NCBI GenBank assembly: GCA_002269645.1
Contig: NIVC01000522.1
Location: 124,001 to 188,000, forward strand
DNA: 64,000 nt
Direction of reading: 5' to 3'
Origin: Macrostomum lignano
Lineage: Eukaryota
Position 1 is the first letter of the stretch, and each line of letters starts with the position of its first letter. Below are positions 6,231 to 36,124 of the stretch, in pieces. A model generated the notes under the pieces. The model did no database searches. It was given only the letters and a program-made list of their open reading frames with translations, and had not been told where the DNA came from. The position numbers and the translations under genes were made by a program.

Positions 6231-6710
6231 TGGAAACGAATTTGCGGAGACAAGGATTACTACGGGTATTAGGTAATTATGTTGATAGCTAATTTGAACA
6301 CAAGGTGTTGAATGATTTAATACTACGCAACTGCAAATTCTCTCTCTCTTGCTGGTGAAACTCGCGCTAACCGCTGGGTGCACATTCAGTTCATCGAGAT
6401 TCGTTTGTGCGCGCTTTCTGGCAAAGCAGACAGTTTCGCCTCCAATTGTAAACCGGAAACAGGATGAGTGACCGAGCATGCATAGGGAGTGTGTGAAGAT
6501 TGGGTTTTTCAAACAACAAAAACTGCCTCTCTGCATGTTTGATTTCTTATCTCTATCTAACATGCTAAATTTCGCTGCTTATATAGAAATATATAAGGTG
6601 TGCACGTCGGCCCACGTACATCATGAGGTTTGCGAGCAGTGCAGTCAACACAGCACTGCTTCAAGCATGCATGACATCATTTATGCACTGTACTAAGTTC
6701 CCTTTGGGCA

Positions 6711-7961
<1,251 letters not shown>

Positions 7962-8626
7962 ATCAAAGCTAAATCTACATGCTTGAACAAAGAATGCGAA
8001 CTCCTATACTCTCAAGAGATCTCGCAACACTCTACTTAAAGTAGAAAATTTGAAATTCAGGCTACAATTATTTTATTTTAGTCGTCCCTAATAAAATCTT
8101 TCTTGTACCTTGCCCTTTTTGAATAATTTTTTGACCTCTAATTATCGCAGGAATATAGCTATTATAGATTTGTAGCCTATATGATTACGCTGAACAATTA
8201 AAAGCACTTAGCCTTAAACCGCTGATCACATCAGCAAAACCCAGTTTCTGGGCTGAATATTATCGATCGGTTGACTTTGCCTTGACATTTCAAGCCCCAC
8301 TCACAGTTCAGTGGCAACTCCTGAATGCTGACAGCACAGCAACTGACGCCCCTTATCACAGATCTCAAATGCGCCAAGCTTTCACAGAAACTAAAATGTC
8401 CTTTGCCAGATAACAGACAGATAAATTTGTGCGATAAGAAAACCAGTGCCAATTGTGATTATCACAGTGAACCAATGGCTCCCATGTTAGTCATAAATTT
8501 TTCCGTGAAATATGACAAAATTTTTCAAGAAATGAAAATGATCATATCTGGTAACAGTCTAGATTTCCGGATGAATCTGTGTCATGCATTGATTCATGCT
8601 TAGACTGTTCTAGAATCTCACTGATA

Positions 8627-10215: not shown

Positions 10216-13137
<2,922 letters not shown>

Positions 13138-16760: not shown

Positions 16761-19700
16761 ATGAGCATCAAATTGAGAGAGACGCTGCCGTTGAGCAACA
16801 TAGATGAGCTTCGCGCCTGGGTTGAAGTATTTGACGCCCAGGCCAGATCCAAAGGAGTCGAAGATACCGACGAGAGACGAGCGCTGACCGACGCTTTCAT
16901 GGGCTGCCTCGGGGTCGCTGAGCTCATAAAAGTCAAGCAGCTGGTTGCTCCAAAAACCCCGTCTGCGATGAAATGGTCTGAAATCAAGCAATGCCTACTG
17001 GCGTTTGTGGAGCCCAAGAAGAAACTGCAGATCGCTGAGAGGACAGCCTTCATGTCTATGCGCCAGGCCGAAGGCGAAACCGTCACCAGCTATGCCGCTC
17101 GTCTCAGGGAGCAAGCCGTCGTATGCGAGTTCGAGAGCCTGAAAAAGGAAGGAGCGGACCCCGCCGAAGCGCTCATCAAGATGCGGCTCATTGCCGGTCT
17201 GGCCAACTCGAACATCAGGAACAAGGTGCTCGAGCGTGAAGTTACTCAAGAACTGACGGTCGATCAGGTCACAGAATATGTTCAGCAGCTGCTGATGGTC
17301 AGCAACTTTTCAGCTGGGTCCCAGGCTGCTGCTCACTCGACTCTTGTGGATTCGGTGGTGCACCAGGCTAGGTCGCTGTCGACCGCGGGTCTGACTACGG
17401 CTGATGAAGCTCACTGCCATCCGGATAGCTCCGGCTCTGTCAACGTTAATTCGGTTATGAGGCAGAAGCAGAACTTCGGACACCAGCGCTGTCAGCGTTG
17501 CGGGTTGAGATCGCACCAGAAGCCCGCTGACTGCCGTGCCCTGAGAGCCACCTGCAATCAATGTGGAAAGCCTGGCCACTTTGCCCGTGTGTGCCGCGGT
17601 GCCAGGACTCACTTCGCTGCCCCAGCTGAAGCAGTCGGCACTCAGCTGAGTCCAGAAGACTCCTATCGTGATGAGCCCGTATTCTACTGTGGAGAAGGAA
17701 AGCCTGCTGAGTTCTGCACTGTGAAAATCAATCACAGAGAAGTGCTGATGGAGAAGGACAGCGGTGCCTCCTGCTTGTTAATCTCACGAAGGATCTGGAA
17801 TGAGCTCGGAAGGCCCCCGCTGAAGTCGGCGAAGTCGCGCATGCTGGCGTATGACGGACACGTTATGAGACAGATGGGCGTTCTGGAATGCCTGGTGGAG
17901 ACCACTGGCAACATCGGCCGCTTCAAGGCGGCAGAGCTGCCCGTCATCGACTGCCAACAGGAGTTTGGGCTGCTCGGCCGGAATCTGCTGGTCCTCGCAC
18001 CGGTGCACCATGCCAGTTCTGATGAGTCAGCCGCCAGCAACAGGTATGAGAGCTTGTTGGGAATATCTGGTGCTACGGGAGAAATCCGTCTTTGTGCTGG
18101 AGCTAGGCCAATTTTCCAGGCAGCCAGAGAACTGCCCTTAGCGCTGAAGCACTTGGTTAAGAAGGAGCTGGACCTGATGGAAAGTGCTGGAATCGTTGAG
18201 AAGGTGATGTCGTCGGAATGGGGCAGTCCAATTGTGGTGACGGTGAAGTCAGATCGGGCATCCGTGAGAATTTGAGGAGATTATTCGGCTGTTAATCGGT
18301 TGGTTCAAGACCAGACCTTCCTCACTCCCTCGATTGAGACAGCCTTTTCGAAAATGGCCAACAAGAAGCTGTTCTGTCGGTTGGACCTATCGGATGCGTA
18401 CTATCAGGTTCCCCTGGATGAGGAATCGAAAGCGGTGACCACCATAAACACTCCGTTTGGTTGCTACAGGTTTAACCGGTTGCCGTATGGCATTAAGGTG
18501 TCGCCATCTGTTTTTCAACGTGTGATGGAAAAGCTCCTGGGAGACCATCCATGTGTCATAGTATATCAGGACGATGTGCTGATCGGTGCTGCGAGCCGGG
18601 CAGAGTTGCAGAAAATTAGGGAGCAGGTGCTCAACAAGTTAAAGGCCGCAAATGTAAAGATCAACGAGGCGAAGTGCGTGATGGAAGCCAACAGCCTGAA
18701 GTTTCTTGGTCACATTATTGATGATGAAGGAATAAAACCCGATCCGGGCATGGTGAAACGTGTGATGGATGTCGAGGTGCCGAAGACCAAGAAAGATTTG
18801 GAGAGATTTCTAGGACTGGCTCAATTTTATGGACGGCTGGTTCCGAACTTTTCTGAGAAATGTCGGCCTCTTCAGGAGCTTCGCCGCGGTGACCGGGTTT
18901 TTGAATGGAACGCGGTGGCTGAGGCGGCATTTTCGGAGGTCAAAAGGAGTCTGGCCTCAAACCCGTGCATCAAGCCGTTTGATGTTTCCGCGCCTGTCTG
19001 TCTTCGAGTTGATGCGAGCGAGAAATCCTTGGGCGCGGTGCTGGTCCAGTCTGGACATCCCGTCATGTTCATGTCCAGGGCGCTCACACAGGCAGAAACC
19101 AACTACTCAAACATCGAGAGAGAAGCGCTGGCTATTGTTTGGGCGGTTGAACGAGCTCGGAAAATGTTGCTAGGGAAGAAATTCATTCTGCAGACCGATC
19201 ACGAGCCTTTGAAGTTTATTCTGAATCCTTGCAAGAATCTTCCAAAGACTGTTTCTGCCAGACTAACCCGGTGGGCTCTGCGGCTATCGGCTTATGATTA
19301 CGAGATTGAATATGTGCCGGGAAAGAAGATGCAGGATGCTGACGCTCTATCAAGGCTGAGCTTTGAAAACCTCGATCCTGAGACGGAGTCTGTTCATCAG
19401 ACTGAGTTGATCACTGACGGAAGCTTGGTTACCGTGGAGGAGCTGAGAGAAAGTACTTCCCGGTGTTCACTGCTTCAAAGACTCCAGCAGAGAATCAGGA
19501 CAGGCCGGTGGGGTCAGGTCTCTCAGCTGGAGCGGCCGTACAAAGCGTGTCGGGAAGCGTTGTCTGTGGAGAACGGGCTGGTCATCCACGGTACCAGGGT
19601 GGTGCCTCCGACCATTCTCCGGCGGCGCATTTTGGAGACCGCGCATGATGAGGTGCGCCCGAGCGCGGAAAATACGAAGGCCCATGTGTCTAAGGAGTTC

Positions 19701-20663
19701 TGGTGGCCTGGACTGGATCGCGATGTCCGTCAGTTTGTTGAGCGGTGTCAGCTGTGCGCTGAAAGACGGCCGGTGGTTCAGCGGAAAATTGACATCTGGC
19801 CATCCGAGAGCGAGCCGTGGTCCCGGGTCCACATGGACCACTGTGAGGCGCCAGGAGTGGGCTTGCTACTGTTGCTGTCTGATGCATACTCGGGTTGGCC
19901 AGAAGCTGTCCAGGTCCCAGACAGGTCTGCGGGCAGTGTGCTGAGAGTGCTGAGAGCGGTGTTCGCCAGAAATGGAGTGCCTCGGACGCTAGTGTCAGAT
20001 AATGCGCCCGAGTTCAGGTCGGAAAGAGTCTCGCAGTGGCTGAACAGTGTCGGCTGCCAGGAGATGCACACCCCACCGTACCATCCGACATCGAACGGGC
20101 AGGCTGAGCGGTTGGTGAGGAGTCTCAAAGGCGGGCTGAAGACGTGGACGAAAGTGGTCCCATTTGACCAGTTCCTGCAGAAATTGCTCCTAACCATTCG
20201 CACCAGCAGGCCTAGCGGGAATCGTTCCAGCTCGCCGGACATTCTCATGTGGGGACGCCGGCTGCGCCATCCGCTGACGATGACCGAGCAGGTGGGTGAC
20301 TCCATCTGGCTGAGGGCTCGGCCTGGCACGGCTCCGGTTCCGGCCAAGTTCATCGTGCAGCACGGCCGGAACACAGCTCTGGTGACCTCAGCTGACCTAC
20401 CAGACGGTGGACTGCGGATGGCGCACGCAAACCAATGGAGCTGCCGCCCGGAGGCGGAGGCCGATCGGCGGCTGACCGAGGCGGCTGGATCCGAGGATCA
20501 GGCTGGGCTATCGATTCAGGGTGCCAAGGCTGGCTCTGACTCGGAGCTGCGTGAACCTGAGCTGACTGACTGTGACTCCCCGCTGAGTTCTGGAGATGAG
20601 ACTCTCCAGCCCCAAAGCTCGTATGATTTGCGGCCTCGTAAACCTGTTTGTTATAAGGTCTAA
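16761..20663 (+). pseudogene. Single-frame gag-pol polyprotein with one in-frame TGA (18273-18275)
   Basis: Two Cys/His knuckles (CQRCGLRSHQKPADC, CNQCGKPGHFARVC), protease KDSGAS, RT VRI*GDY, LDLSDAYYQV and YQDDVL, RNase H VDASEKSLGAVL and TDHEPL, integrase H..WWP..C-x2-C with HMDH / SDNA / QAER. The two listed ORFs share one frame. Confidence 0.92.
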
Positions 20664-21380: not shown

Positions 21381-22066
21381 CAGTGTCGTACGCAGTAATT
21401 TTATTGGAGGGGTCGCAACCCCAAATGGCGCCAATATTTGGTCTCTTTGTGGGCGCCCCTGTCTCTTGGTAGGCGCCCCCTGTCTCTTGGTCGGCGCCCC
21501 TGTCTCTTGTTGGGCGCCCCTGTCTCTTGGTGGGCGCCCCTGTCTCTTGGTGGGCGCCCCTGTCTCTTGATGGGCGCCCCTGTCTCTTGGTGGGCGCCCC
21601 TGTCTCTTGGTGGGTAGCCCCTGTCTCTTGGTGGGCGCCCCTGTCTCTTGGTGGGCGTCCCTGTCTCTTGGTGGGCGCCCCCTGTCTCTTGGTGGGTGCC
21701 CCTGTCTCCTGGTGGGCGCCCCTGTCTCTTGGTGGGCGCCCCTGTCTCTTGGTGGGCGCCCCTGTCTTTTGGTGGGCGCCCCTGTCTCTTGGTGGGCGCC
21801 CCTGTCTCTTGTTGAGCGCCCCTGTCTCTTGGTGGGCGCCCCTGTCTCTTGGTGGGCGCCCCTGTCTCTTGGTGGGTGCCCCTGTCTCCTGGCAGGCGGC
21901 TCTGTCCCTGTCTGCCACGTCCAAGAGAAGTAGCAAAAGTTAGGCTCCTTTCATTCGTAGAGCTGGGTTGCCTCGTTCATAAATTTTATAAAGGAGCGAA
22001 ATTTTTATGGCGGCGTTTGGGGTGGTGGGCCGCGACCCCTTGGGCCCCTCCCTGCGTACGCCGCTG
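21381..22066. mobile_element. hAT-like MITE carrying the 20-bp GAGACAGGGGCGCCCACCAA minisatellite
   Basis: TIRs CAGTGTCGTACGCAG (21381-95) and CTGCGTACGCCGCTG (22052-66), 13/15 match. Subterminal GGGGTCGC inverted motifs. 8-bp flanks AGCCGATG / GGACGATT match at 5/8. Confidence 0.62.
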
Positions 22067-22434
22067 GGACGATTTCGCCAACAAGTCTTATGGGCAATTA
22101 AAAGCCATCGTCGTTTAAAATCATTCAAAGTTGTGCCCAACGCAGCCAAACTCAGACTGCGCAGAGACTCAGCAAACAGAACAAAATACTGACTGCGCGT
22201 GCTTGACAACAGAGCGCAGACAGCAAATGCTTTAGTACAATGCATTTTGCTTTTGTAAAAGCGAATTCTGCCCTGCATTGTCTGAACGGTGGTGTACACC
22301 AACCCCATAAATGCCACGCGCTCGACTCGTGCTCAACACTTTACTGCTCAAATATGCGCTTTGGATATGCTATTGCAAAGCAGCTTAAGAATTTTCTTTT
22401 CCACCTAACAGCAGCAGCAGCAGCAGAAGAAGAA

Positions 22435-22502
22435 GCATGCCAACGGAACACCCTTCACGCGGGGGCTGTGTCCTGAGGTCAACCCTCGGGCCAATTGTTT
22501 CG
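22435..22502 (+). ncRNA. HDV-like (CPEB3-type) self-cleaving ribozyme fold at the LINE 5' end
   Basis: P1 GCA(U)GCC 22435-41 / GGCUGU 22464-69 (one bulge). P2 CGGAACA 22444-50 / UGUUUCG 22496-502. P3 CCC / GGG around L3 UUCACGC. J1/4 GU. P4 CCUGAGG / CCUCGGG. J4/2 CCAA. Folded by eye. Confidence 0.78.
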
Positions 22503-22537
22503 GCCACACTCACCCGAGTAGCAGATTACAGTCACCC

Positions 22538-23056
22538 ATGGCCCGTCCTACCGGCCGTCTCGGGGGGCTGTCCTCGCCCATCAGCACGGTGTTTCTCATC
22601 TCCTTTTTTCTCTGCCTGGCCCCCGATCGTCTCATCCTGCGCGCGGGGGACGTCGAAACTAATCCAGGCCCGTTCTGGCCGTGTGGCTCCTGCGGACGCA
22701 ACGTGGGCAGCTTCTCCGCTGTGCAGTGCCGAAGCTGCCTCGTTTGGAACCACGGCAATTGTGCTCATCTTTCCAAGAACCAGATCTACCAGCTTGCCAA
22801 GCAGAACGGAGGCTGGGCCTGTGCGGCTTGTACGAAACCCGCGGCCCCTGCGAAAAATAATTCTGCCGACAGAGCGCCTAAAACCGTCAATACCGCTAAC
22901 CGTCAAGGCCCAAGTGACGCTACCAAGCAGCCACCAGCCACAAACCTGAGGCAGACGGGCCGTCAAAAACGAGCAACTGAACCGACCGCAACTACCAAAC
23001 CTCAGGACCAACCGGAAATTAAAGCCCTCCAGCCAGCCCCCAAGGGGATCAACTAA
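22538..23056 (+). CDS. LINE N-terminal ORF: hydrophobic leader, 2A-like peptide (DVETNPGP) and PHD finger
   Basis: LILRAGDVETNPGP (motif at 22649-22672) followed by CGSC..VQCRSC..WNHGNC..WACAAC, a C4HC3 pattern. The frame is broken just before the APE start. Confidence 0.8.
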   Translation: MARPTGRLGGLSSPISTVFLISFFLCLAPDRLILRAGDVETNPGPFWPCGSCGRNVGSFSAVQCRSCLVWNHGNCAHLSKNQIYQLAKQNGGWACAACTKPAAPAKNNSADRAPKTVNTANRQGPSDATKQPPATNLRQTGRQKRATEPTATTKPQDQPEIKALQPAPKGIN

Positions 23057-23222
23057 ACTGTAACGGCATCGGAGCTAGAACCACTGAGAGCTGGCCGTTG
23101 TCCTGGACCGGGAGAAACCCCACGCGGCCCTGCTGCAGGAAACCTTCCTCCGCCAGGACTCCCGCCCCCGCGTTTTACTAACTACAATCCCGCCGGCCGC
23201 ATCGATTTTATATCGATTTAGC

Positions 23223-25581
23223 TCCTATAGGCCCATCTCCCTACTCAGCTGCGTAGGAAAACTGATGGAACGTATGGTCACGAACCGGCTGTATTTCTGG
23301 CTTGAGACCCGCAGCCTGCTAAACCGCAATCAGGCAGGTTTCCGTAAAGGACACTCTAACATGGACCGACTGACGCGCATCACCCAAGCGATTTTCGATG
23401 CTTTCGAACAGAAGAAGCCGGAGCGCGCCATCCTTATCCTGCTGGACTTCGCCAAAGCCTACGACTGGGCGTGGCGCCCGGTCTTATACGCGATAATGGC
23501 TCGGCTTGGCGTCCCTAAGCATGTTATTCACTTCATCAAAAACCTCCTCTGCGACCGTCGCGCCTGCGTGCGCTGGTGGGACGCGACCTCCAAATGGAGA
23601 GTCTTTTCCGACGGTCTGCCTCAGGGGTCGGTCATCGCACCTTTGCTATGGCTAGTCTACGTCCATGAAATTGACGACGGCATCGACGAGAGCGTCCACC
23701 GTTCACTTTTCGCCGATGACACGGCACTTTTGGCGACGGGCCGGTCAATGGGATGGACGCCTGCGCTGCGAAGATCCAACCCGCGCTGGACCGCGTCGTC
23801 ACGTGGACTAACAATTGGAAGGTAACGCTGAGCCACTCAAAATGCGTCTTCACCACCTTCACGCTGAATCCCAGTGAATGCGGCGCAAAGGTCCTTTCAA
23901 CACTGCGCATTGAGGGGCAGGAGCTTACGTACGATCCGTCACCTACGTTTCTCGGCCTACGCCTTGACGATCAATTGACTTTTGCTAACCATGTCGAGGT
24001 CGTGCGCCAAAAGATGGCCACTAGGCGGCGCTGCCTGCAAACTCTCGCTGGCAAAGTCTATGGCGCTCACCGGACCACGCTGCGCACCGCCTACACGGCC
24101 TACATTCGGTCTGTGTTTGATTACGGAGCTGCCATCTACTTCAACCACGCCGCGCCCACTCTCAGGGACAAGCTGGAGGCTGAACAACATAAGTGCGCGC
24201 GCATCATCACCGGATGCCTCGGTGTCACGAATTGCCGCTCTCTGCTCGCCGAAGCGGACCTACCGGCACTGCACCTGCAAAACAGCTTCTCAGCAACGAA
24301 TTTATCCGCATCATGAGCCTGCCCGACGATGACCCAGCGCGCGAGTTGCTGTCGATCGCGCCACCGCCGCGCCTCTGCAGCAGGGCCCATGAAGCCTGGA
24401 AGCGCGAGGTCAGCCCCGACCAACCTGTCGATATTCTGAGATGGGACGAAGACATTACCTTGAGCAACAAACCTTGTTTCCGCCGCGTTGGACAGTGGCT
24501 GTGCGAACTCGCTGGGTGCCACCTGGAGGACCTCATGCGCCCTGTCAAGCCCGCGCTCCCGCCATGGCACTGGCTGGATAAGCAGGTGACCATCGCGGTC
24601 GACCTGGTCGCCGCCACGCGCCGGAGTGACCCTCCCGACTTCCGCCGGGAGATTGCTGAGAGGACGTCGGGCCTCCTTCATCCGGCGGACGTGCTCATCT
24701 GGACCGATGGATCCACCCGGCCGGATGGCACCGCGTCTGGAGGAGGAGCTATTATCACCTCGGGCCTTCTGGGTATCCGGGAAGATGTCTGTGTGCCGGC
24801 CGGCCGCTGGAACAGTAGCACCAGTGCGGAACTCGTTGCGATCGAAGCGGCCCTTGCCCGCCTGGCCGAGTTTCTCCGTGGTGGCGGCAGCCCGGCCATT
24901 ACTGTCAGGCTGTACACGGATTCCCGTGCCGGCCTCCAAACGATTCTGCGCGGCCCGACCGTCGCGGCGGACGATGTCACCCGACGCGTCTGGGCTAATA
25001 TCGCTGCCCTGCCGAGTGGCTGCAAAGTTCACCTGCAATGGGTGCCGGGTCACGCTAACCTCCCCGGGAACGAAGCGGCTGATGAGATGGCCGGGAGAGC
25101 TACCGAGGCTAAGCAACAGCCGAACACCGTCACCCCTATCGCCGCTAGGACTGTCATCAATCACGTTCTCCGAGGTTGGCGAAAAACGCGAGACCACATG
25201 CACCCGTATCCGAGCCCGACGCCTGGCCACGGCGATCTCCCGAGATGGGGCCAGGTCACCCTTTGCCAGCTGAGAACGCGCAAATCTCCGCTCACGCGCG
25301 ACACGCTCCACCGATTTGGCCTCACCACTGACGACCGCTGCATTACCTGTGGAGAGTCGGACTCGGTCGAGCATTTGCTCCTTACCTGCCCAGGCTACCA
25401 CCAGGCTCGCATCCGCACCTGGGGTGGCATCAGCGTTGATTGGAATACCGTGCTGGGGGGCGAGGGCAGCCTCCTCTGTGACTACCTGCGCAGGGTGGGC
25501 CGCCAAGAACCGCCTATCGACGATCCTGGTGGCAGAGCGGCCCCGACCCGGCCTCCCGCGGGCGGCCGCAGGTCGGAGTGA
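23223..25581 (+). pseudogene. LINE RT-RNase H-zinc knuckle region, frameshifted
   Basis: Motifs are split over ORFs 23265-23825, 23753-24316 and 24193-25581, implying two frameshifts (~23750 and ~24290). Confidence 0.88.
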
Positions 25582-26392
25582 AGAGAGAGAGAGAGAGAGA
25601 GAGAGAGAGCAGAAGAAGAAGAAAAACTTCCAAGATTCGACTCAATTTGTATTGGAGAACTGCGTTATTCAAAGATTCGATAGTTGTCATTAAAGTTTCG
25701 TTTTAACCATGGCACTTAATAAATCATCTCGGTGATAGGAAGGCACTTGTCGCCTCTGACCCCCGGCACCACGGCTTTGATGTCTATATGAGACTTATTT
25801 TCTATGCAAAATAGTAATTACTTTTACCTCTCGCAGTGCAGCAGGCTTGACAGAAAGACAATGTCCATGACGAGACCAGATGATGTTTGCCCACAGCACA
25901 CTTTGCAGCTACATTGCATGCAAATCCAGCAACTTTAGGCTGGATATACAGTCTTCACTTTTCCTCCTTAATACAATAATATTTTTCTCTTGAAGATATT
26001 ATGACCAACAACATGTGCATTTAGTGGCTGAATTTTAGTATACTGAACTAGCTAGCAATCTTCGCCTCCCCCAACGGGGCGGCAACAAAGATAAATTTTT
26101 TTAATAAACTAATTTAGCTTCCAACTTTGTACAATCACCAATATTACTTTCTTAAGGAAAATGACCTTTTAATCAAAGTCCTTTGAGATTTGGCATCAAA
26201 GCCTCCCTTTAAGCCATGGCGTAACTATAGCTCTCCATATTGGTACTTGGCCTAGCAACAACTCCCAATTGACTCTCGGCATCTCAGAAAGTCCTCATGA
26301 ACCAATTGACATCTCAGCTGTCTATTAGTTAAAATTTTATCAAGTTTGAAGTGAGTGCCCCAGTTTTTTGTTTCTGCATTCATCAGATGCAG

Positions 26393-28106: not shown

Positions 28107-29345
28107 GTTGGCGCCCCTGTCTCTTTGTTGGCGCCCCGTCTCTTGGTGGGCGCCCCTGTCTCTTTGTTGGGCCCCTGTCTCTTGGTGGGCGCCCCTGTCT
28201 CTTGGTGGGGCCCCTGTCTCTTGGTGGGCGCCCCTGTCTCTTGGTGGGCCCCTGTCTCTTGGTAGGCGCCCCTGTCTCTTGGTAGGCGCCCCTGTCTCTT
28301 GGTGGGCGCCCGTCTCTTGGTGGGCCCCTGTCTCTTGGTAGGCGCCCCTGTCTCTTGGTAGGCGCCCCTGTCTCTTGGTGGGCGCCCGTCTCTTGGTGGG
28401 CCCCTGTCTCTTGGTAGGCGCCCCTGTCTCTTGGTAGGCGCCCCTGTCTCTTGGTGGACGCCCGTCTCTTGGTGGGTGCCCCTGTCTCTTGGTGGGCCCC
28501 TGTCTCTTGGTGGGCGCCCGTCTCTTGGTGGGTGCCCCTGTCTCTTGGTGGGCGCCCGTCTCTTGGTGGGTGCCCCTGTCTCTTGGTGGGTGCCCCATGT
28601 CTCTTGGTGGGTGCCCCCTGTCTCTTGGTGGGCGCCCCTGTCTCTTGGTGGGCGCCCCTGTCTCTTGGTGGGCCCCTGTCTCTTGGTAGGCGCCCCTGTC
28701 TCTTGGTAGGCGCCCCTGTCTCTTGGTGGGCGCCCGTCTCTTGGTGGGCCCCTGTCTCTTGGTAGGCGCCCCTGTCTCTTGGTAGGCGCCCCTGTCTCTT
28801 GGTGGGCGCCCGTCTCTTGGTGGGCCCCTGTCTCTTGGTAGGCGCCCCTGTCTCTTGGTAGGCGCCCCTGTCTCTTGGTGGACGCCCGTCTCTTGGTGGG
28901 TGCCCCTGTCTCTTGGTGGGCCCCTGTCTCTTGGTGGGCGCCCGTCTCTTGGTGGGTGCCCCTGTCTCTTGGTGGGCGCCCGTCTCTTGGTGGGTGCCCC
29001 TGTCTCTTGGTGGGTGCCCCATGTCTCTTGGTGGGTGCCCCCTGTCTCTTGGTGGGCGCCCCTGTCTCTTGATGGGTGCCCCTGTCTCTTGGTGGGTGCC
29101 CCCTGTCTCTTGGTGGGCGCCCCTGTCTCTTGATGGGTGCCCCTGTCTCTTGGTGGGCCCCTGTCTCTTGGTGGGCGCCCGTCTCTTGGTGGGTGCCCCT
29201 GTCTCTTGGTGGGCGCCCGTCTCTTGGTGGGTGCCCCTGTCTCTTGGTGGGCGCCCCTGTCTCTTGGTGGGGCGCCCCTGTCTCTTGGTGGGCGCCCCTG
29301 TCTCTTGGTGGGGCGCCCCTGTCTCTTGGTGGGGCGCCTCTGTCT
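28107..29345 (-). repeat. 17-21-bp variant array of the GAGACAGGGGCGCCCACCAA minisatellite
   Basis: Read directly. Shows higher-order block duplications. Confidence 0.95.
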
Positions 29346-29987
29346 CCTAGCGTGTGGATGCCCCGTCCAACAGGAGGTGGCAAACGTTGAGGTCCTGCAA
29401 TTCATTGAGCTTGGTTGCCTATTTTTCATTCTGCTTTCCGAGAAGCGCAATTGTTGTGGAGGCCACGGCCCCTTCTAAGAACGTGAACGTTATGTGGCTG
29501 TCAAATGGCTGTCAAATCAGCAACTAACAAGTTTGTCATCGGAGACCCGTGTCCCCCAGCGCACGGCTGTACTTGTTAACTTTTATTTCTCAAACCGACA
29601 CAATAGCATAAAATCTGATATGAAAGATTAACTACTAATTACTTGCCAGCATTACTGTTAGTAGCATAGAGGCACATATCAAAAGCAAAGATTTATTAAA
29701 AATCTATATGCATAATTTTATTTAGGTAAATTTCATTAGCATGTCAAAGTGCTTGCAGTACGCAATAACAGGCTAAATATGCTCTGTGCGGCAATAATCA
29801 AGAGTAAAAAGTATCCACATACCTGCATGCAATGCGTGTTATTAATAACACAAAAATTGAATTCTACTACCCAGAGTAGTTTTGTCCGGAAGCTCACGGC
29901 AAGCCAAGATAAATGAGTAGAGAGAAGAGAGGTAAGCGCATGAACTTTGGATATTTGCACAGAATAAGCAAAACAATTCACATATTA

Positions 29988-30946
29988 GCTCTGACAGCTG
30001 CTTACAGACTGCTCTGACAGCTGCTTACAGACTGCTCTGACAGCTGCTTACAGACTGCTCTGACAGCTGATTACAGACTGCTCTGACAGCTGATTACAGA
30101 CTGCTCTGACAGCTGCTTACAGACTGCTCTGACAGCTGCTTACAGACTGCTCTGACAGCTGCTTACAGACTGCTCTGACAGCTGCTTACAGACTGCTCTG
30201 ACAGCTGCTTACAGACTGCTCTGACAGCTGCTTACAGACTGCTCTGACAGCTGCTTACAGACTGCTCTGACAGCTGATTACAGACTGCTCTGACAGCTGC
30301 TTACAGACTGCTCTGACAGCTGCTTACAGACTGCTCTGACAGCTGCTTACAGACTGCTCTGACAGCTGCTTACAGACTGCTCTGACAGCTGCTTACAGAC
30401 TGCTCTGACAGCTGCTTACAGACTGCTCTGACAGCTGCTTACAGACTGCTCTGACAGCTGATTACAGACTGCTCTGACAGCTGCTTACAGACTGCTCTGA
30501 CAGCTGCTTACAGACTGCTCTGACAGCTGCTTACAGACTGCTCTGACAGCTGCTTACAGACTGCTCTGACAGCTGCTTACAGACTGCTCTGACAGCTGAT
30601 TACAGACTGCTCTGACAGCTGCTTACAGACTGCTCTGACAGCTGCTTACAGACTGCTCTGACAGCTGATTACAGACTGCTCTGACAGCTGCTTACAGACT
30701 GCTCTGACAGCTGCTTACAGACTGCTCTGACAGCTGATTACAGACTGCTCTGACAGCTGCTTACAGACTGCTCTGACAGCTGCTTACAGACTGCTCTGAC
30801 AGCTGATTACAGACTGCTCTGACAGCTGCTTACAGACTGCTCTGACAGCTGCTTACAGACTGCTCTGACAGCTGATTACAGACTGCTCTGACAGCTGCTT
30901 ACAGACTGCTCTGACAGCTGCTTACAGACTGCTCTGACAGCTGATT
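29988..30946. repeat. 23-bp highly homogeneous minisatellite CTGCTCTGACAGCTG(C/A)TTACAGA
   Basis: Read directly, ~41 copies. Confidence 0.95.
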
Positions 30947-31518
30947 ATTACAGACAAAAAATGACATACCGGTAAAAGTAAAATTGAGAATTGTCCAGTT
31001 TAATCACACAGACGAACAAATAAAGCTCAACAGCAGGATATTCTAAAGCAGACAGACGGTAGGTAAAATAATTTGAACAGAACTTAGCGATAAAATCTGA
31101 CCCAGTCATCAGATCAACTAAAAATAAACTAAAAATTGAAAACAACTCATACTACCTCAAGTAGTAAGCCAAGAAAACAAATCGACACGCAAATGAGGAT
31201 AAAAAATTTATGTAAAAAATCATAATTATCGACAATAAAACATTTTGTAAAAAAACAGACGGACAATTTAATAGGATAATATTCACAACTGACTACTGCT
31301 TGAATCTTTGGGGCGCTTTGCATTCAATTGTTAACAAAAAATCAATGCATATACTACTAATGCAGCTTTAGTCAGTAGTGCAGTAACAGTATGTGCAGCT
31401 GTAGATAAAAATTAAATAACCACCAATGAATAAAACTGAATTCAAAGTAACTTCCACTACAGTATTGATACTTTGCCGACAAACAAACAAAACATGCTTA
31501 TTTTGTAATCATTCACTA

Positions 31519-31786: not shown

Positions 31787-34700
31787 TCAGCGCTGGCCAT
31801 GATAGCCGAAGCCGCCATTCAGCGAGGCTCCGTGATCCACCGAGGCCCTGCCGGCGGCGCTACCACGCAGAGGCGAGGGAATCCGGCCGCCTTGTTGCTG
31901 CACAGGCCGCGGCAAACCCATCTGGCCGCTGGAGGCCCGTCTGGCGCCGCCAACGCCGCCACCGCCGCCGGGTGGCACCGGGGAGGCGGTCTGGTTCGGC
32001 CTTGGCAGCATGCTGGACCGCTGCTGGGCGACAACCGGAGTGACGGAGGCAGGCCGAGATGGCAGCTGCGGTGAAGGGAGTCAGTGAATGCAAAGTTTAG
32101 TCTCAAGCACTGTTAAAATGTGCTGTTTAAACACAATAATGAACTTAATAAACATACGGCACTTTGAGCCAGCACCTGCTGCTGATGGTGATACTGCTGC
32201 TGTTGCTGGGCAGAAGCAGCTGAGGCGCCTCTGTACGCCTGGCCCATCGCGCTCGAGGGCCGCTGGTGCTGCAGCTGCTGCTGGGCCGGCCTGGCTGGCA
32301 AAGTCCTGCGCTGCCGCTGATGCCCGCTCTCAGGTGCCGAGTGGTGCAGCCCAGCCGGTCCTGCGGCCCCCACTGCCAGCTGGTGCGACTGCTGCTGATG
32401 CGGCTGAGAGGCTGCCAAATCGTCAGTTGAGCCGGTTGAACTGGCTATGCTCAGCTGCGACCGCGACCGACTCACCTGCCATTGTGCATCAAAAGTCCAA
32501 GCTGACCTTTGCTACTGTTATAGGTTGGATTTCCCTGACCCTTCAACCCTCACAACACAACCCTTCAACCCTTTCCAACCCTGACCCTTGAACCCTTCAC
32601 AACCCTGACCCTTGAACCCTTCACAACCCTGACCCTTCGGTTTCAACACTTCACAACCCTGACCCTTCGGTTTCAACCCTTCACAACCCTGATCCTTCGG
32701 TTTCAACACTTCACAACCCTGACCTTTCAACCCTTCACAACCCTGATCCTTCGGTTTCAACCCTTCACAACCCTGATCCTTCGGTTTCAACCCTTCACAA
32801 CCCTGAACTTTCAACCCTTCACAACCCTGACCTTTCAACCCTTCACAACCCTGATCCTTCGGTTTCAACCCTTCACAACCCTGACCTTTCAACCCTTCAC
32901 AACCCTGACCTTTCAACCCTTCACAACCCTGACCTTTCAACCCTTCACAACCCTGACCTTTCAACCCTTCACAACCCTGATCCTTCGGTTTCAACCCTTC
33001 ACAACCGTGACCCTTGAACCCTTCACAACCCTGACCCTTGAACCCTTCACAACCCTGACCCTTCGGTTTCAACACTTCACAACCCTGACCCTTCGGTTTC
33101 AACCCTTCACAACCCTGACCCTTCGGTTTCAACCCTTCACAACCCTGATCCTTCGGTTTCAACACTTCACAACCCTGACCTTTCAACCCTTCACAACCCT
33201 GACCTTTCAACCCTTCACAACCCTGATCCTTCGGTTTCAACCCTTCACAACCCTGACCCTTCGGTTTCAACCCTTCACAACCCTGACCCTTCAACCCCTC
33301 CATCACGCAGCACGGCATCCTTAAAACCCACCTGCTGCCTCAGCGCATCAATCTGCATCTTGGCCACAATCTGCACATCCGTGAGGTCGTGCAGCCGCTC
33401 CTGCGAGCTCGTCGACGCCCCGATGCCACCGTCAGCTGAATCCTCGTAGCCTCCGCCTCCGCCACCGCCGCCTCCAGCACCAACCGGCGCGGTTCCGGCG
33501 CTGACTCCGCGAGAATGCGGCCGGCGGAAGGTCCTGGAATCAAATCCCGGAGATGCCCCGCTAGCTGACGAGTAGCCGTTGTTGCCGCCGGCACTGCTGA
33601 CTGCGGCAGCCGGGGAGTTCAGCTGGCGGTACAGCGACGATCGACCGTCTGGACGCTGACGCTCATCAGAGCCAGCAGCTGATGGACTGTTGAGCTCGGT
33701 GGCAGCAGCGGGGGCAACGGGCGAGGCGGGGCTGCAGGGCGCGAGGCGGCCGATCAAGGCGAGTTCGTTCAGCTTGGCCAGCAGGCTGCTGCCGCCGCGT
33801 TTGTGCCGCAGGTGCTGACCGGCGTCTGGCGTCTGGGGTTTGGCGAGTTCCAGATTCAATTGAATGAGTCAGAAGTGGCTCGGAACTGCGAAGTGAACTG
33901 CGATATCGGATAACAGAGTCTGAGATCAGCTGAGATTTAGGGGTGAGATTAGAGTAAGTCAGGTGATAAGACGATATGAGTCAGAGGATGGAAATGAGAT
34001 GAGAGTCAGAGAGGTGAGATCAGATGAGAGCTAGGGGTGAGATCAGATGAGAGCCAGGGTGTGAGATCAAATGAGAGTCAGGGGTCAGATCGGATAAGAT
34101 TCAGGGGTGAGATCAGACGAGATTCAGGAGTGAGATCAGACGAGAGTCAGGGGTGAGATCACATGAGAGTCAGGGGATGAGGTCAGATGAGAGTCAGGGG
34201 ATGAGATCACATGAGAGTCAGGGGGTGAGATCACATGAGAGTCAGGGGATGAGATCAGATGAGAGTCAGGGGATGAGATCAGATGAGAGTCAGGGGGTGA
34301 GATCACATGAGAGTCAGGGGATGAGATCAGATGAGAGTCAGGGGATGAGATCAGATGAGAGTCAGGGGTGAGATCACATAAGAGTCAGGGGATCAGATCA
34401 GATGAGAGTCAGGGGGTGAGATCACATGAGAGTCAGGGGATGAGATCAGATGAGAGTCAGGGGTGAGATCACATGAGAGTCAGGGGATGAGATCAGATGA
34501 GAGTCAGGGGGTGAGATCACATGAGAGTCAGGGGGTGAGATCACATGAGAGTCAGGGGGTGAGATCACATGAGAGTCAGGGGATGAGATCAGATGAGAGT
34601 CAGGGGTGAGATCACATGAGAGTCAGGGGATGAGATCAGATGAGAGTCAGGGGGTGAGATCACATGAGAGTCAGGGGGTGAGATCACATGAGAGTCAGGG

Positions 34701-35320
34701 GGTGAGATCACATGAGAGTCAGGGGATGAGATCAGATGAGAGTCAGGGGGTGAGATCACATGAGAGTCAGGGGATGAGATCAGATGAGAGTCAGGGGGTG
34801 AGATCACATGAGAGTCAGGGGATGAGATCAGATGAGAGTCAGGGGGTGAGATCACATGAGAGTTAAGGGTTAGATCAGATGAGAGTCAGGGGTGAGAGTC
34901 AAACAATCATCAGCTCACCGTGTAGCCGTCAGCGCCACTAGCGGAGCCAGCCAGCCAGTCCAGGGTGGGCAGGGGTCTCTGACCTCCCCTGGCCGCAGCC
35001 AGGCTGGAGCTGAGATGCTGAGACCTGAACAGCCATTGCTCCTCATCCCCGCCGGCAGCGGCTGGGTCCAGATCCCACTCGCTGAACGAGATTCGCCTGT
35101 GCCGAGCGGAATGGGACCCCACCTGAGAGTTCGCCGAGGGCGACCCCTGACGATGCTGATGATGAGGCGGAGATTCTGGAGGCGGAGGGAACTTAACTGT
35201 GGGAGAAAGCTGCTGTTGCTGTTGCTGCTGCTGCTGGGACCTAATCCGGTCGTTCTGTTCTTCGAGTTTGCGAACCAGATCCTGCAGTTTCTGCACGTCC
35301 GCCTGGGGCGATGGATCCAT
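31787..35320 (-). CDS. SLAIN2: SLAIN motif-containing microtubule plus-end protein, 4 exons, ~499 aa
   Basis: Exons 35320-34919, 33832-33332 (acceptor less certain), 32475-32158 and 32065-31787, all phase 0 with GT-AG. Motifs DVQKLQDLVRKLEEQN, SLLAKLNE, LHDLTDVQIVAKMQIDALRQ and SxIP-like SMLP / GRIP. Orthologue of the SLAIN1/2 family. Confidence 0.82.
32535..33300. repeat. 21/27-bp minisatellite filling SLAIN intron 2
   Basis: Units CCCTTCACAACCCTGAC(CCTTCGG)TTTCAA. Confidence 0.92.
33995..34897. repeat. 24-bp minisatellite filling SLAIN intron 1
   Basis: Units GAGATCA(C/G)ATGAGAGTCAGGGG(G/A)T. Confidence 0.93.
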
Positions 35321-35597: not shown

Positions 35598-36124
35598 CCA
35601 GAGACAGGGGCGCCCACCAAGAGAAATGGGCGCCCAAAAAGACAGGGACGCCCACCAAGAGACAGGGGCGCCCACCAAGAGACAGGGGGGCCCACCAAGA
35701 GACAGGGGGGGGGGCACCAAGAGACAGGGGGCCCACCAAGAGACAGGGGGGCCCACCAAGAGACAGGGGGGCCCACCAAGAGACAGGGGGGCCCACCAAG
35801 AGACAGGGGCGCCCACCAAGAGACAGGGGCGCCCACCAAGAGACAGGGGCGCCCACCAAGAGACAGGGGGGCCCACCAAGAGACAGGGGGGCCCACCAAG
35901 AGACAGGGGGGGCCACCAAGAGACAGGGGGGCCCACCAAGAGACAGGGGGGCCCACCAAGAGACAGGGGCGCCCACCAAGAGACAGGGGCGCCCACCAAG
36001 AGACAGGGGGGGGGGCCACCAAGAGACAGGGGGCCCACCAAGAGACAGGGGCGCCCACCAAGAGACAGGGGGGGGCCACCAAGAGACAGGGGGCCCACCA
36101 AGAGACAGGGGCGCCCACCAAGAA
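35598..36124 (+). repeat. 20-bp GAGACAGGGG(G/C)GCCCACCAA minisatellite
   Basis: Fourth array of this family. Confidence 0.94.

What the first reader, a model, noticed from the sequence alone, without database searches (positions are those of the whole stretch)
22435..22502. HDV-like ribozyme starting exactly at the LINE/TSD boundary
Seen: all helices of the nested double pseudoknot can be drawn in 68 nt. P2 (7 bp), P3 (3 bp) and P4 (7 bp) pair fully, L3 UUCACGC is nearly identical to CPEB3 UUCACGU, J1/4 is GU, and J4/2 CCAA supplies the catalytic C. The predicted G1-U wobble cleavage site is G22435, the last base of the left TSD copy. P1 has one unpaired U, and a single missing A (GGCAUGU) would make it a perfect 7 bp, so this copy may be slightly damaged. 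Established: HDV-like ribozymes process the 5' ends of R2, L1Tc/ingi and some RTE elements. Inference: this family self-excises from host read-through transcripts, and the ATG follows 35 nt later.
Basis: partly seen in the sequence, partly recalled or inferred. Interest (0 to 1): 0.85.

Follow-up and report, generated by a model that had tools for sequence, protein, structure and literature searches.

The report
HDV-like ribozyme heading a barnacle-type LINE
The 68 bases are a slightly damaged copy of a self-cleaving (HDV-like) RNA motif that marks the first base of a family of jumping genes related to ones in barnacles; this kind of arrangement is already known from other jumping genes, so it is a well-supported new example rather than a new principle.

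Summary
Window 22435-22502 (+) folds on paper into the full HDV-like nested double pseudoknot. A structure-only descriptor finds it as the only hit in the window. It found none in 15 Mb of composition-matched random sequence.

Ten related LINE copies carry the same motif about 180-215 nt upstream of a conserved N-terminal 2A peptide. One is from the barnacle Amphibalanus amphitrite; the others are from ENA and Logan assemblies.

Across ten sequences, 96% of cells pair, against 73% after shuffling. Twenty of 26 pairs show compensatory changes, including P1, P2, P3, P4 and P1.1. The L3 core and the J4/2 C-N-A-A are invariant.

Target-site duplications place the element's first base at the predicted cleavage site, or within one extra base of it, in seven copies.

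The window copy is a relic. About 660 codons (endonuclease and half the reverse transcriptase) are deleted, the frame is broken, and one unpaired U interrupts P1. Self-cleavage of this copy is therefore doubtful.

No Rfam family matches any member, and I found no paper on it. HDV-like ribozymes that process LINE 5' ends are established for R2, L1Tc/ingi and others. Verdict: new member of a known kind. Catalysis was not tested.

The parts
22422..22435 (.). Left copy of the target-site duplication AGCAGAAGAAGAAG. Its last base, G22435, doubles as the predicted G1.
   Evidence: Exact 14-nt repeat of 25608-25621.
22435..22502 (+). HDV-like ribozyme, whole motif (68 nt). Predicted scission is 5' of G22435.
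   Evidence: Direct reading; only descriptor hit in the window; 0 hits in controls; family model hit at 29.4 bits, E 1e-6.
22435..22441 (+). P1 5' strand GCAUGCC. U22438 is unpaired. G22435 pairs as a G.U wobble with U22469.
   Evidence: Pairs with 22464-22469. P1 covaries at 5 of 7 columns in the family.
22444..22450 (+). P2 5' strand CGGAACA.
   Evidence: Pairs with 22496-22502. 6 of 7 P2 columns show compensatory changes. Also recovered without supervision by RNAalifold.
22451..22463 (+). P3 (CCC/GGG) enclosing L3 UUCACGC, the active-site loop.
   Evidence: P3 always pairs, with one C-G to G-C flip in L003. L3 positions U1, C3, C5 and G6 are invariant in 10 sequences.
22464..22469 (+). P1 3' strand GGCUGU.
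22470..22471 (+). J1/4 GU. G22470 pairs with L3 C22456 to form P1.1.
   Evidence: The G and its partner C are invariant. The second P1.1 pair is G-C in L005 and L039, a change on both sides.
22472..22490 (+). P4 hairpin CCUGAGG-UCAAC-CCUCGGG.
   Evidence: All 7 P4 columns show compensatory changes in the family.
22491..22495 (+). J4/2 CCAAU. C22491 aligns with the invariant C, the presumed catalytic cytosine.
   Evidence: C, A, A and U are invariant in the family alignment.
22496..22502 (+). P2 3' strand UGUUUCG.
22538..23056 (+). First ORF remnant of the LINE: a short leader, the 2A peptide GDVETNPGP (D-V-E-T-N-P-G-P at 22649-22672), then a PHD finger.
   Evidence: ORF list; Pfam PHD E 1.5e-4, 22.1 bits, just under Pfam's 24-bit cut-off; 2A motif shared by all relatives that carry it.
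23178..25581 (+). Remnant of the reverse transcriptase (second half), the RNase H and the C-terminal region, spread over three reading frames.
   Evidence: tblastn of the intact 1600-aa relative P0012: aa 18-146, then 808-1596, so aa 147-807 are missing. Pfam RVT_1 and RNase_H.
25582..25607 (+). (GA)n 3' tail of the element.
   Evidence: The same kind of tail occurs in L003, L007, L009 and L010. L001, L039 and L040 have (GAA)n.
25608..25621 (.). Right copy of the target-site duplication.

Best explanation
The 68 nt are the 5'-terminal HDV-like self-cleaving ribozyme of a single-ORF LINE family. The family's layout is ribozyme, short leader, 2A peptide, PHD finger, AP endonuclease, reverse transcriptase, RNase H, then a (GA)n or (GAA)n tail. 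Its named relatives are in the barnacle Amphibalanus amphitrite.

Proposed mechanism:
1. The element is transcribed, at least in part, as a read-through from upstream DNA.
2. The nascent RNA folds into the nested double pseudoknot.
3. The J4/2 cytosine (C22491 here), held by L3, P1.1 and P3, promotes attack of the 2'-OH of the upstream nucleotide. The chain is cut 5' of G1.
4. The LINE RNA therefore starts at G1 and keeps the ribozyme.
5. Full-length reverse transcription copies the ribozyme into each new insertion.

Shown here: the fold, its covariation, the invariant core, and the coincidence of G1 with the element's first base.

Inferred: catalysis, co-transcription, and any role in translation of the ORF that starts 35 nt downstream.

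The window copy itself sits in an internally deleted, frame-shifted, non-autonomous element and has one unpaired U in P1. It is most likely a weakened or dead copy.
For: Specificity:
- It is the only descriptor hit in the window, with none in 15 Mb of random controls.
- A stricter, family-neutral descriptor hits only LINE 5' ends in 358 kb of window, related loci and unrelated metagenome DNA.

Conservation:
- The same motif lies 180-215 nt upstream of the 2A peptide in L001, L005, L006, L007, L009, L010, L011 and L039.
- It also sits at the 5' end of a deletion derivative, L003/L004.

Covariation in 10 sequences:
- 96.2% of cells pair, against 72.6% in shuffles (0 of 500 shuffles reach it).
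- 20 of 26 pairs change on both sides.
- Slid controls give 46-55% paired.
- RNAalifold on an unsupervised alignment recovers P2, P3 and P4, with 12 of 16 pairs compensatory.

First base of the element:
- L007 and L009 are 96% identical from exactly G1 onward and unrelated upstream.
- TSDs end at G1 or at -1 in the window, L007, L009, L010 and L040.
- One extra base intervenes in L001 and L039.

Literature:
- The cleavage site of HDV-like ribozymes is the first nucleotide of P1, and P1 is 6 or 7 bp (PMC4908430).
- The same arrangement is experimentally established for R2 (PMC3774820) and L1Tc (PMC3383444).
Against: - No cleavage assay or RNA 5'-end data exist for any member.
- No Rfam family matches the window or the best relatives, at gathering score or at E<=10.
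- The main covariation count used an alignment that I fitted by hand to the structure.
- In this copy P1 is interrupted by an unpaired U. Mismatches in P1 are reported to be uncommon and to abolish or strongly reduce cleavage (PMC3774820).
- L005, which has the most intact ORF, has only a 5-bp P1. L006 has an A.C mismatch in P2.
Confidence: 0.85

Rival explanations
1. The conserved 5' structure is real but not catalytic. It acts as an internal promoter, an IRES-like element or a recognition structure. The uniform 5' ends come from transcription starting at +1, not from cleavage.
For: No biochemical evidence was obtained here. In L1Tc the same first 77 nt act as both internal promoter and ribozyme (PMC3383444), so a 5'-end coincidence alone does not separate initiation from cleavage. 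The ORF starts only 35 nt downstream.
Against: The structure is specifically the HDV-like double pseudoknot. It has a 3-bp P3, a 7-nt L3 with the conserved U and G, a P1.1 pair that covaries, and an invariant unpaired C followed by N-A-A in J4/2. A promoter acts as DNA and would not select for compensatory base-pair changes in five helices.
Confidence: 0.08
2. The ribozyme family is real, and this particular copy is still an efficient ribozyme. The unpaired U22438 is tolerated and was already present in the master copy that produced this insertion.
For: The copy has a perfect 14-nt TSD and an intact (GA)n tail, and its 5' end lies at G1. This fits a parent RNA processed at G1. Every invariant core nucleotide is retained.
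Against: P1 mismatches are reported to abolish or strongly reduce cleavage (PMC3774820). No other family member has a bulge in P1. The U could have arisen after insertion. The copy has the lowest family-model score, 29.4 bits.
Confidence: 0.3
3. The motif is a chance resemblance to the HDV-like fold in GC-rich DNA.
For: The nested MFE is not better than shuffles (z = -0.14). There is no Rfam hit.
Against: There were no descriptor hits in 15 Mb of matched random sequence. Ten homologous copies show compensatory changes. The position is fixed at the element's 5' end. All 27 metagenome sequences that share the L3/P3 string fail the full descriptor.
Confidence: 0.01

Closest known systems
L1TcRz, the HDV-like ribozyme in the first 77 nt (Pr77) of the L1Tc/ingi LINEs of trypanosomatids
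   Same: The ribozyme occupies the first ~70-80 nt and cuts 5' of +1, so it travels with the element. The single long ORF has an N-terminal 2A peptide, AP endonuclease, RT and RNase H. Internally deleted non-autonomous derivatives keep the ribozyme and the 3' end: NARTc and RIME there; L003 and the window copy here (PMC3383444).
   Different: The host is a metazoan (barnacle-type). A PHD finger lies between the 2A and the endonuclease. Tails are (GA)n or (GAA)n rather than poly(A). No sequence comparison with Pr77 was made, promoter activity is unknown, and the RT clade was not determined.
R2 (and R4, Dong) 5' HDV-like ribozymes of arthropods
   Same: A double-pseudoknot ribozyme releases the element's 5' end from a co-transcript. 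P1 shows compensatory variation while P3, L3 and P1.1 are conserved. P1 defects accompany inactive copies (PMC3774820).
   Different: R2 is site-specific in 28S rDNA and uses a restriction-like endonuclease. It often takes its P1 5' strand from the 28S sequence and frequently lacks P4 or has a very long J1/2. The present family is dispersed, has an AP endonuclease, keeps the whole P1 inside the element and has a compact 63-84-nt ribozyme.
CPEB3 ribozyme (mammalian intron)
   Same: The window copy matches it in total length (68 nt) and in the position of L3 at nt 20-26. L3 is UUCACGU in L001, L010 and L011 and UUCACGC in the window. J1/4 is GU with a single-pair P1.1. The L3 comparison is supported by the mouse primer in PMC10919898; the rest rests on my knowledge of the published human sequence.
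   Different: CPEB3 is a single-copy intronic element, not at a transposon end. The Rfam CPEB3 model does not score the window at E<=10. [quoted passage not shown]
2A-bearing single-ORF LINEs of metazoans (Odon et al. 2013)
   Same: The 2A-like D(V/I)ExNPGP lies at the N-terminus of the long ORF, followed in some elements by a PHD domain and then the endonuclease (PMC3708506).
   Different: That study does not mention ribozymes (0 occurrences). Of its six clades, only Ingi carries RNase H, as far as I know.

Membership tests
HDV-like self-cleaving ribozymes | Nested double pseudoknot with P1, P1.1, P2, P3 and P4 in the canonical order | tested here: met
   All helices can be drawn in the window. 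Across the family, 96% of cells pair and 20 of 26 pairs are compensatory. P2, P3 and P4 are recovered without supervision.
HDV-like self-cleaving ribozymes | Uninterrupted 6- or 7-bp P1 whose first nucleotide is the cleavage site (PMC4908430) | tested here: inconclusive
   Met in L001, L003, L007, L009, L010, L011 and L039. In the window copy, P1 is 6 bp interrupted by the unpaired U22438.
HDV-like self-cleaving ribozymes | Unpaired catalytic cytosine at the start of J4/2 | tested here: met
   C22491 aligns with an invariant C followed by N-A-A in all 10 sequences. Its catalytic role was not tested.
HDV-like self-cleaving ribozymes | 3-bp P3 closing a ~7-nt L3 with the conserved U and G, and a C that forms P1.1 with the G after P1 | tested here: met
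   L3 positions U1, C3, C5 and G6 and the J1/4 G are invariant. The second P1.1 pair covaries, U/U to G-C, in L005 and L039. The importance of the L3 G is described in PMC3774820.
HDV-like self-cleaving ribozymes | Mg2+-dependent self-scission giving a 5'-OH at G1 | not testable with these tools
   Needs in vitro transcription and cleavage assays or 5'-OH RNA sequencing.
Curated Rfam HDV-like families (HDV ribozyme, CPEB3, drz-type models) | Score at or above the family's gathering threshold | tested here: not met
   No hit at gathering score in the window or 8 loci. No HDV-type hit at E<=10 around the window motif or the perfect L007 motif. These models are sequence-specific, so this excludes membership of those particular families, not of the structural class.
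LINE 5'-end processing ribozymes (R2, L1Tc type) | Predicted cleavage site coincides with the first base of the element | tested here: met
   TSDs end at G1 or -1 in the window, L007, L009, L010 and L040, and at -2 in L001 and L039. L007/L009 homology starts exactly at G1.
LINE 5'-end processing ribozymes (R2, L1Tc type) | Element RNA arises as a co-transcript with upstream host sequence | not testable with these tools
   No transcript data are available.
2A (StopGo) peptides in LINE ORFs | D(V/I)ExNPGP motif at the N-terminus of the long ORF | tested here: met
   The window has GDVETNPGP at 22649-22672. The motif is conserved in 7 relatives, and is NPGH in L001. Recoding activity was not tested.
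Ingi/L1Tc clade of LINEs | RT phylogeny places the element in the Ingi clade | not tested
   No reference RT sequences could be brought in. Only the domain order is comparable: 2A, APE, RT, RNase H in a single ORF.

The most novel reading that the evidence does not exclude
The barnacle-type family may be a metazoan branch of, or sister to, the Ingi/L1Tc lineage. In that case the three-part module would be an ancient inherited unit rather than a repeated convergence. The module is a 5' HDV-like ribozyme, an N-terminal 2A and a single APE-RT-RNase H ORF. As in L1Tc, the first ~70 nt might also serve as an internal promoter.
Probability: 0.2. Interest if true: 0.55.

Novelty: new member of a known kind. 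Interest (0 to 1): 0.4.

Why it matters
The finding adds a well-supported and unusually compact (63-84 nt) HDV-like ribozyme family to the catalogue. No Rfam family matches it, and I found no paper on it.

The family comes with natural covariation data for every helix, P1.1 included. Its members also form a natural series of P1 variants: 7 bp, 6 bp, 5 bp and bulged. These could be used to measure how P1 geometry tunes cleavage.

The pairing of a 5' ribozyme with an N-terminal 2A peptide was known from trypanosome L1Tc. This family shows it in a crustacean-type LINE as well. That bears on how promoter-less LINEs get transcribed, trimmed and translated.

For annotation, the motif gives a precise marker of the full-length 5' end of this LINE family and of its deletion derivatives.

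Tried and rejected
- Rfam scans of the window, of the motif region at E<=10, of 8 related loci and of the perfect L007 motif gave no HDV-type hit. This was rejected as evidence against the fold, because those models are narrow and ignore the pseudoknots.
- Plain MFE folding is uninformative for a pseudoknot (z = -0.14).
- The protein search with the window's own first ORF found nothing. With its RNase H ORF it found only 5 hits. Relatives came only after switching to the intact ORF of L001.
- No sibling copy of the window's own subfamily was found, so the ancestral state of P1 (extra U or lost A) is open.
- The JGI metagenome scan with a family pattern returned 27 loci. All failed the full descriptor and look like bacterial coding DNA, so they were rejected as chance.
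- An alternative P1 register for the window bulges U22467 on the 3' strand and gives 7 pairs that use G22470 and U22471. I rejected it because the J1/4 G and its L3 partner C are invariant in the family.
- A 7-bp P1 using the base before G1 is possible in L006 and L010. I rejected it for L010 because that base belongs to the TSD.
- The plain MAFFT alignment (A1) put P1' and P4 out of register, so I replaced it with an N-padded structural alignment (A2, A3).
- Ruminski et al. 2011 and Webb et al. 2009 are not held in the library. I cite them only through other papers and from my own knowledge.
- The RT clade and the source organism of the window could not be determined.

Full report
OBSERVATION

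Window 22435-22502 (+) reads GCAUGCC AA CGGAACA CCC UUCACGC GGG GGCUGU GU CCUGAGG UCAAC CCUCGGG CCAAU UGUUUCG. Laid out in the order of an HDV-like ribozyme, it gives:
- P1: 22435-22441 with 22464-22469, 6 pairs, U22438 unpaired, G22435.U22469 wobble.
- P2: 22444-22450 with 22496-22502, 7 pairs, one G.U.
- P3: CCC/GGG.
- L3: UUCACGC.
- J1/4: GU.
- P4: 7 pairs, one U.G.
- J4/2: CCAAU.

The ATG of the first ORF is at 22538, 35 nt after the motif.

The 14-nt repeat AGCAGAAGAAGAAG ends at G22435 and recurs at 25608-25621, directly after a (GA)n tail. It brackets a 3.17-kb LINE remnant. Because the repeat ends in AAG units, the boundary in this copy alone is only 'consistent with' G1.

IS IT MORE THAN CHANCE?

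I wrote a descriptor that uses structure only. It requires P1 of 7 bp (or 6 bp with one bulge), P2 of at least 6 bp, P3 of 3 Watson-Crick pairs, L3 of 6-8 nt containing a C, a G after P1', P4 of at least 5 bp, and a C opening J4/2.
- It hits only this site in both strands of the window.
- It hits nothing in 240 random 64-kb sequences generated with the dinucleotide make-up of the window or of the element.

Rfam gives no hit at gathering score and none at E<=10 in 22300-22650. The nested MFE is unremarkable (z = -0.14). Both are expected for a short pseudoknotted motif with little primary-sequence conservation.

RELATIVES

The window's first ORF has no database homologues. Its RNase H ORF led to an ENA contig, L001, that carries a related LINE. 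The intact ORF of that LINE retrieved 82 relatives. The closest named ones (60-69% identity) are from the barnacle Amphibalanus amphitrite.

Contigs for these gave full 5' regions. Eight elements, the window's included, encode an N-terminal 2A peptide (LLLRAGD[VI]ExNPGP).

A CCC-UNCNCGY-GGG hairpin lies 180-215 nt upstream of the 2A, embedded in a complete HDV-like fold:
- L001 7470-7553
- L005 1200-1264
- L006 4756-4819
- L007 4683-4755
- L009 4566-4638
- L010 4637-4699
- L011 3375-3437
- L039 9303-9369 (A. amphitrite VIIS01000780.1)

Specificity checks:
- A covariance model built from eight of them finds nothing else in 171 kb of window plus loci, except one further copy, L003/L004 282-353.
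- It finds the A. amphitrite copy at 47.6 bits.
- A stricter descriptor with no bulges or mismatches hits only LINE 5' ends in 358 kb.
- The 27 JGI metagenome sequences that share the L3/P3 string all fail it.

COVARIATION

On an N-padded structural alignment of ten sequences (A3), the named double-pseudoknot structure gives the following:
- 96.2% of cells paired, against 72.6% after shuffling (0 of 500 shuffles reach it).
- 46-55% paired when partners are slid by 1-3 columns.
- 20 of 26 pairs with changes on both sides.

By helix, the pairs with changes on both sides are 5 of 7 in P1, 6 of 7 in P2, all 7 in P4, one C-G to G-C flip in P3 (L003), and the second P1.1 pair, which becomes G-C in L005 and L039.

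This alignment was fitted by hand, which favours the structure. As a control, RNAalifold on an unsupervised MAFFT alignment independently predicts P2, P3 and P4, with 12 of 16 pairs compensatory.

The invariant positions are those expected of the active site: L3 U1, C3, C5 and G6, the G after P1', and C-N-A-A in J4/2. The importance of the L3 G and of an intact P1 is described for R2 ribozymes (PMC3774820).

THE CLEAVAGE SITE IS THE ELEMENT'S FIRST BASE

- L007 and L009 are 96% identical over 2 kb starting exactly at the predicted G1, and unrelated upstream.
- The TSD ends at -1 in L009 (15 nt), L010 (13 nt) and L040 (11 nt). It ends at G1 itself in the window (14 nt) and L007 (15 nt).
- One extra base lies between the TSD and G1 in L039 (14 nt) and L001 (CTGCAG).
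- In L010 the TSD shows that the 6-bp register of P1 is the right one, not a possible 7-bp one.

L040 is a distant relative (37% protein identity, no 2A). I first drew its fold by eye: G1.U wobble, GCC/GGC P3, a G-C second P1.1 pair, a 3-bp P4 and one A.C in P2. It scores only 8.4 bits with the family model. The TSD then placed its first base exactly at the predicted G1. All right-hand TSD copies follow a (GA)n or (GAA)n tail.

WHAT THE WINDOW COPY IS

Against the intact 1600-aa relative P0012, the window element keeps residues 18-146 (2A, PHD) and 808-1596 (second half of RT, RNase H, C-terminus), spread over three frames. It has lost the endonuclease and half the RT, so it cannot be autonomous.

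L003 is a more extreme derivative: the ribozyme is joined directly to the last 1.1 kb. Keeping the two ends while losing the middle is what NARTc and RIME do relative to L1Tc and ingi (PMC3383444).

Most family members have a 6-nt P1 3' strand followed by G-N. A 6- or 7-bp P1 is normal for the class (PMC4908430). The window has the 6-nt 3' strand but 7 nt on the 5' side.

P1 mismatches are reported to abolish or strongly reduce cleavage (PMC3774820). This copy is therefore probably impaired. It keeps every invariant core base.

MECHANISM

Steps 1-3 are inferred by analogy and step 4 is speculative. The evidence here is the TSD data cited in step 3.
1. Read-through or other transcription produces RNA that spans the upstream flank.
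2. The ribozyme folds co-transcriptionally and cuts 5' of G1, using the J4/2 cytosine.
3. The RNA starting at G1 carries the ribozyme, so full-length cDNA regenerates it. This explains why insertions begin at G1 (TSD data shown here).
4. The ORF 35 nt downstream is translated, and the 2A releases a short leader from the PHD-APE-RT-RNase H protein.

COMPARISON AND NOVELTY

HDV-like ribozymes at LINE 5' ends are established for R2 (PMC3774820) and L1Tc/ingi (PMC3185411, PMC3383444, PMC4035085). From my own knowledge they are also established for R4, R6, SART, Baggins and RTE (Ruminski et al. 2011, not held in the library).

2A peptides at the N-terminus of single-ORF LINEs, sometimes followed by a PHD finger, are also known (PMC3708506). 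That paper does not mention ribozymes. The combination of ribozyme and 2A is documented for L1Tc.

I found no paper linking ribozymes with barnacles, and no Rfam family matches. The finding is therefore a new member of a known kind. It is very well supported at the family level, but represented in the window by a decayed copy.

Noticed in passing
window 22538-22831: The LINE's first ORF encodes a virus-like 2A (StopGo) motif, LILRAGDVETNPGP, about 37 codons in, followed immediately by a PHD-type zinc finger. The 2A is conserved in all close relatives.
   Followed up: partly
L003 274-1512 (same as L004): This is a deletion derivative. An intact ribozyme (GCC/GGC P3, 6-bp P1) is joined directly to the last ~1.1 kb (RNase H region) and a (GA)n tail. 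It looks like a non-autonomous element in the manner of NARTc/RIME.
   Followed up: partly
L040 4568-4627: A distant relative (37% aa identity, no 2A, (GAA)n tail) has an HDV-like fold with a 3-bp P4 and one A.C in P2. Its 11-nt TSD ends exactly one base before the predicted G1.
   Followed up: partly
L010 4637-4642 versus L011 3375-3380: Two copies are 96% identical from the last base of the P1 5' strand onward, yet differ at 3 of the first 5 bases of P1 (GUCGAC versus GCUGGC). Both still pair fully with the same 3' strand, GUCGGC. The density of change is unexplained. It could reflect 5'-end heterogeneity or selection for pairing.
   Followed up: no
L005 1200-1264: The copy with the most intact ORF (1600 aa) has only a 5-bp P1 (CCACC/GGUGG). 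No TSD was found to fix its 5' end.
   Followed up: no
window 22404-22426: The (CAG)n run just upstream of the element can pair with the P1 3' strand: GCAGC with GCUGU, 5 bp. It could compete with the damaged P1. In R2, upstream flanks are known to modulate cleavage.
   Followed up: no
TSDs in window, L007, L009, L010, L039, L040: Left ends of the TSDs begin with AG or GAG and merge with the (GA)n or (GAA)n tail. Several targets are purine-rich microsatellites. This suggests priming by microhomology between tail and target.
   Followed up: no
window 18300-20663: A 787-aa ORF carries RT, RNase H and integrase domains of a Ty3/gypsy-type LTR retrotransposon, 1.8 kb upstream of the LINE.
   Followed up: no
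window 21441-21892 and 28110-29346 (also 1077-1809, 35600-36123): Arrays of a related 20-nt unit (GGCGCCCCTGTCTCTTGGTG and its complement) flank the LINE region. They create long spurious ORFs with PTKRQGRPPRDRGAHQETGA-like repeats.
   Followed up: no
window, whole: The window is unusually dense in micro- and minisatellites, with 38 TRF rows at score >=200. Examples are (ATCT)n 6710-7964, (TATC)n 10842-12666, and 23-nt and 24-nt arrays at 29988-30947, 33921-34897 and 45051-45950.
   Followed up: no
window 22437-22949: An ATG inside the P1 5' strand opens a 170-aa ORF in another frame that overlaps the ribozyme and the first LINE ORF. It is probably spurious.
   Followed up: no
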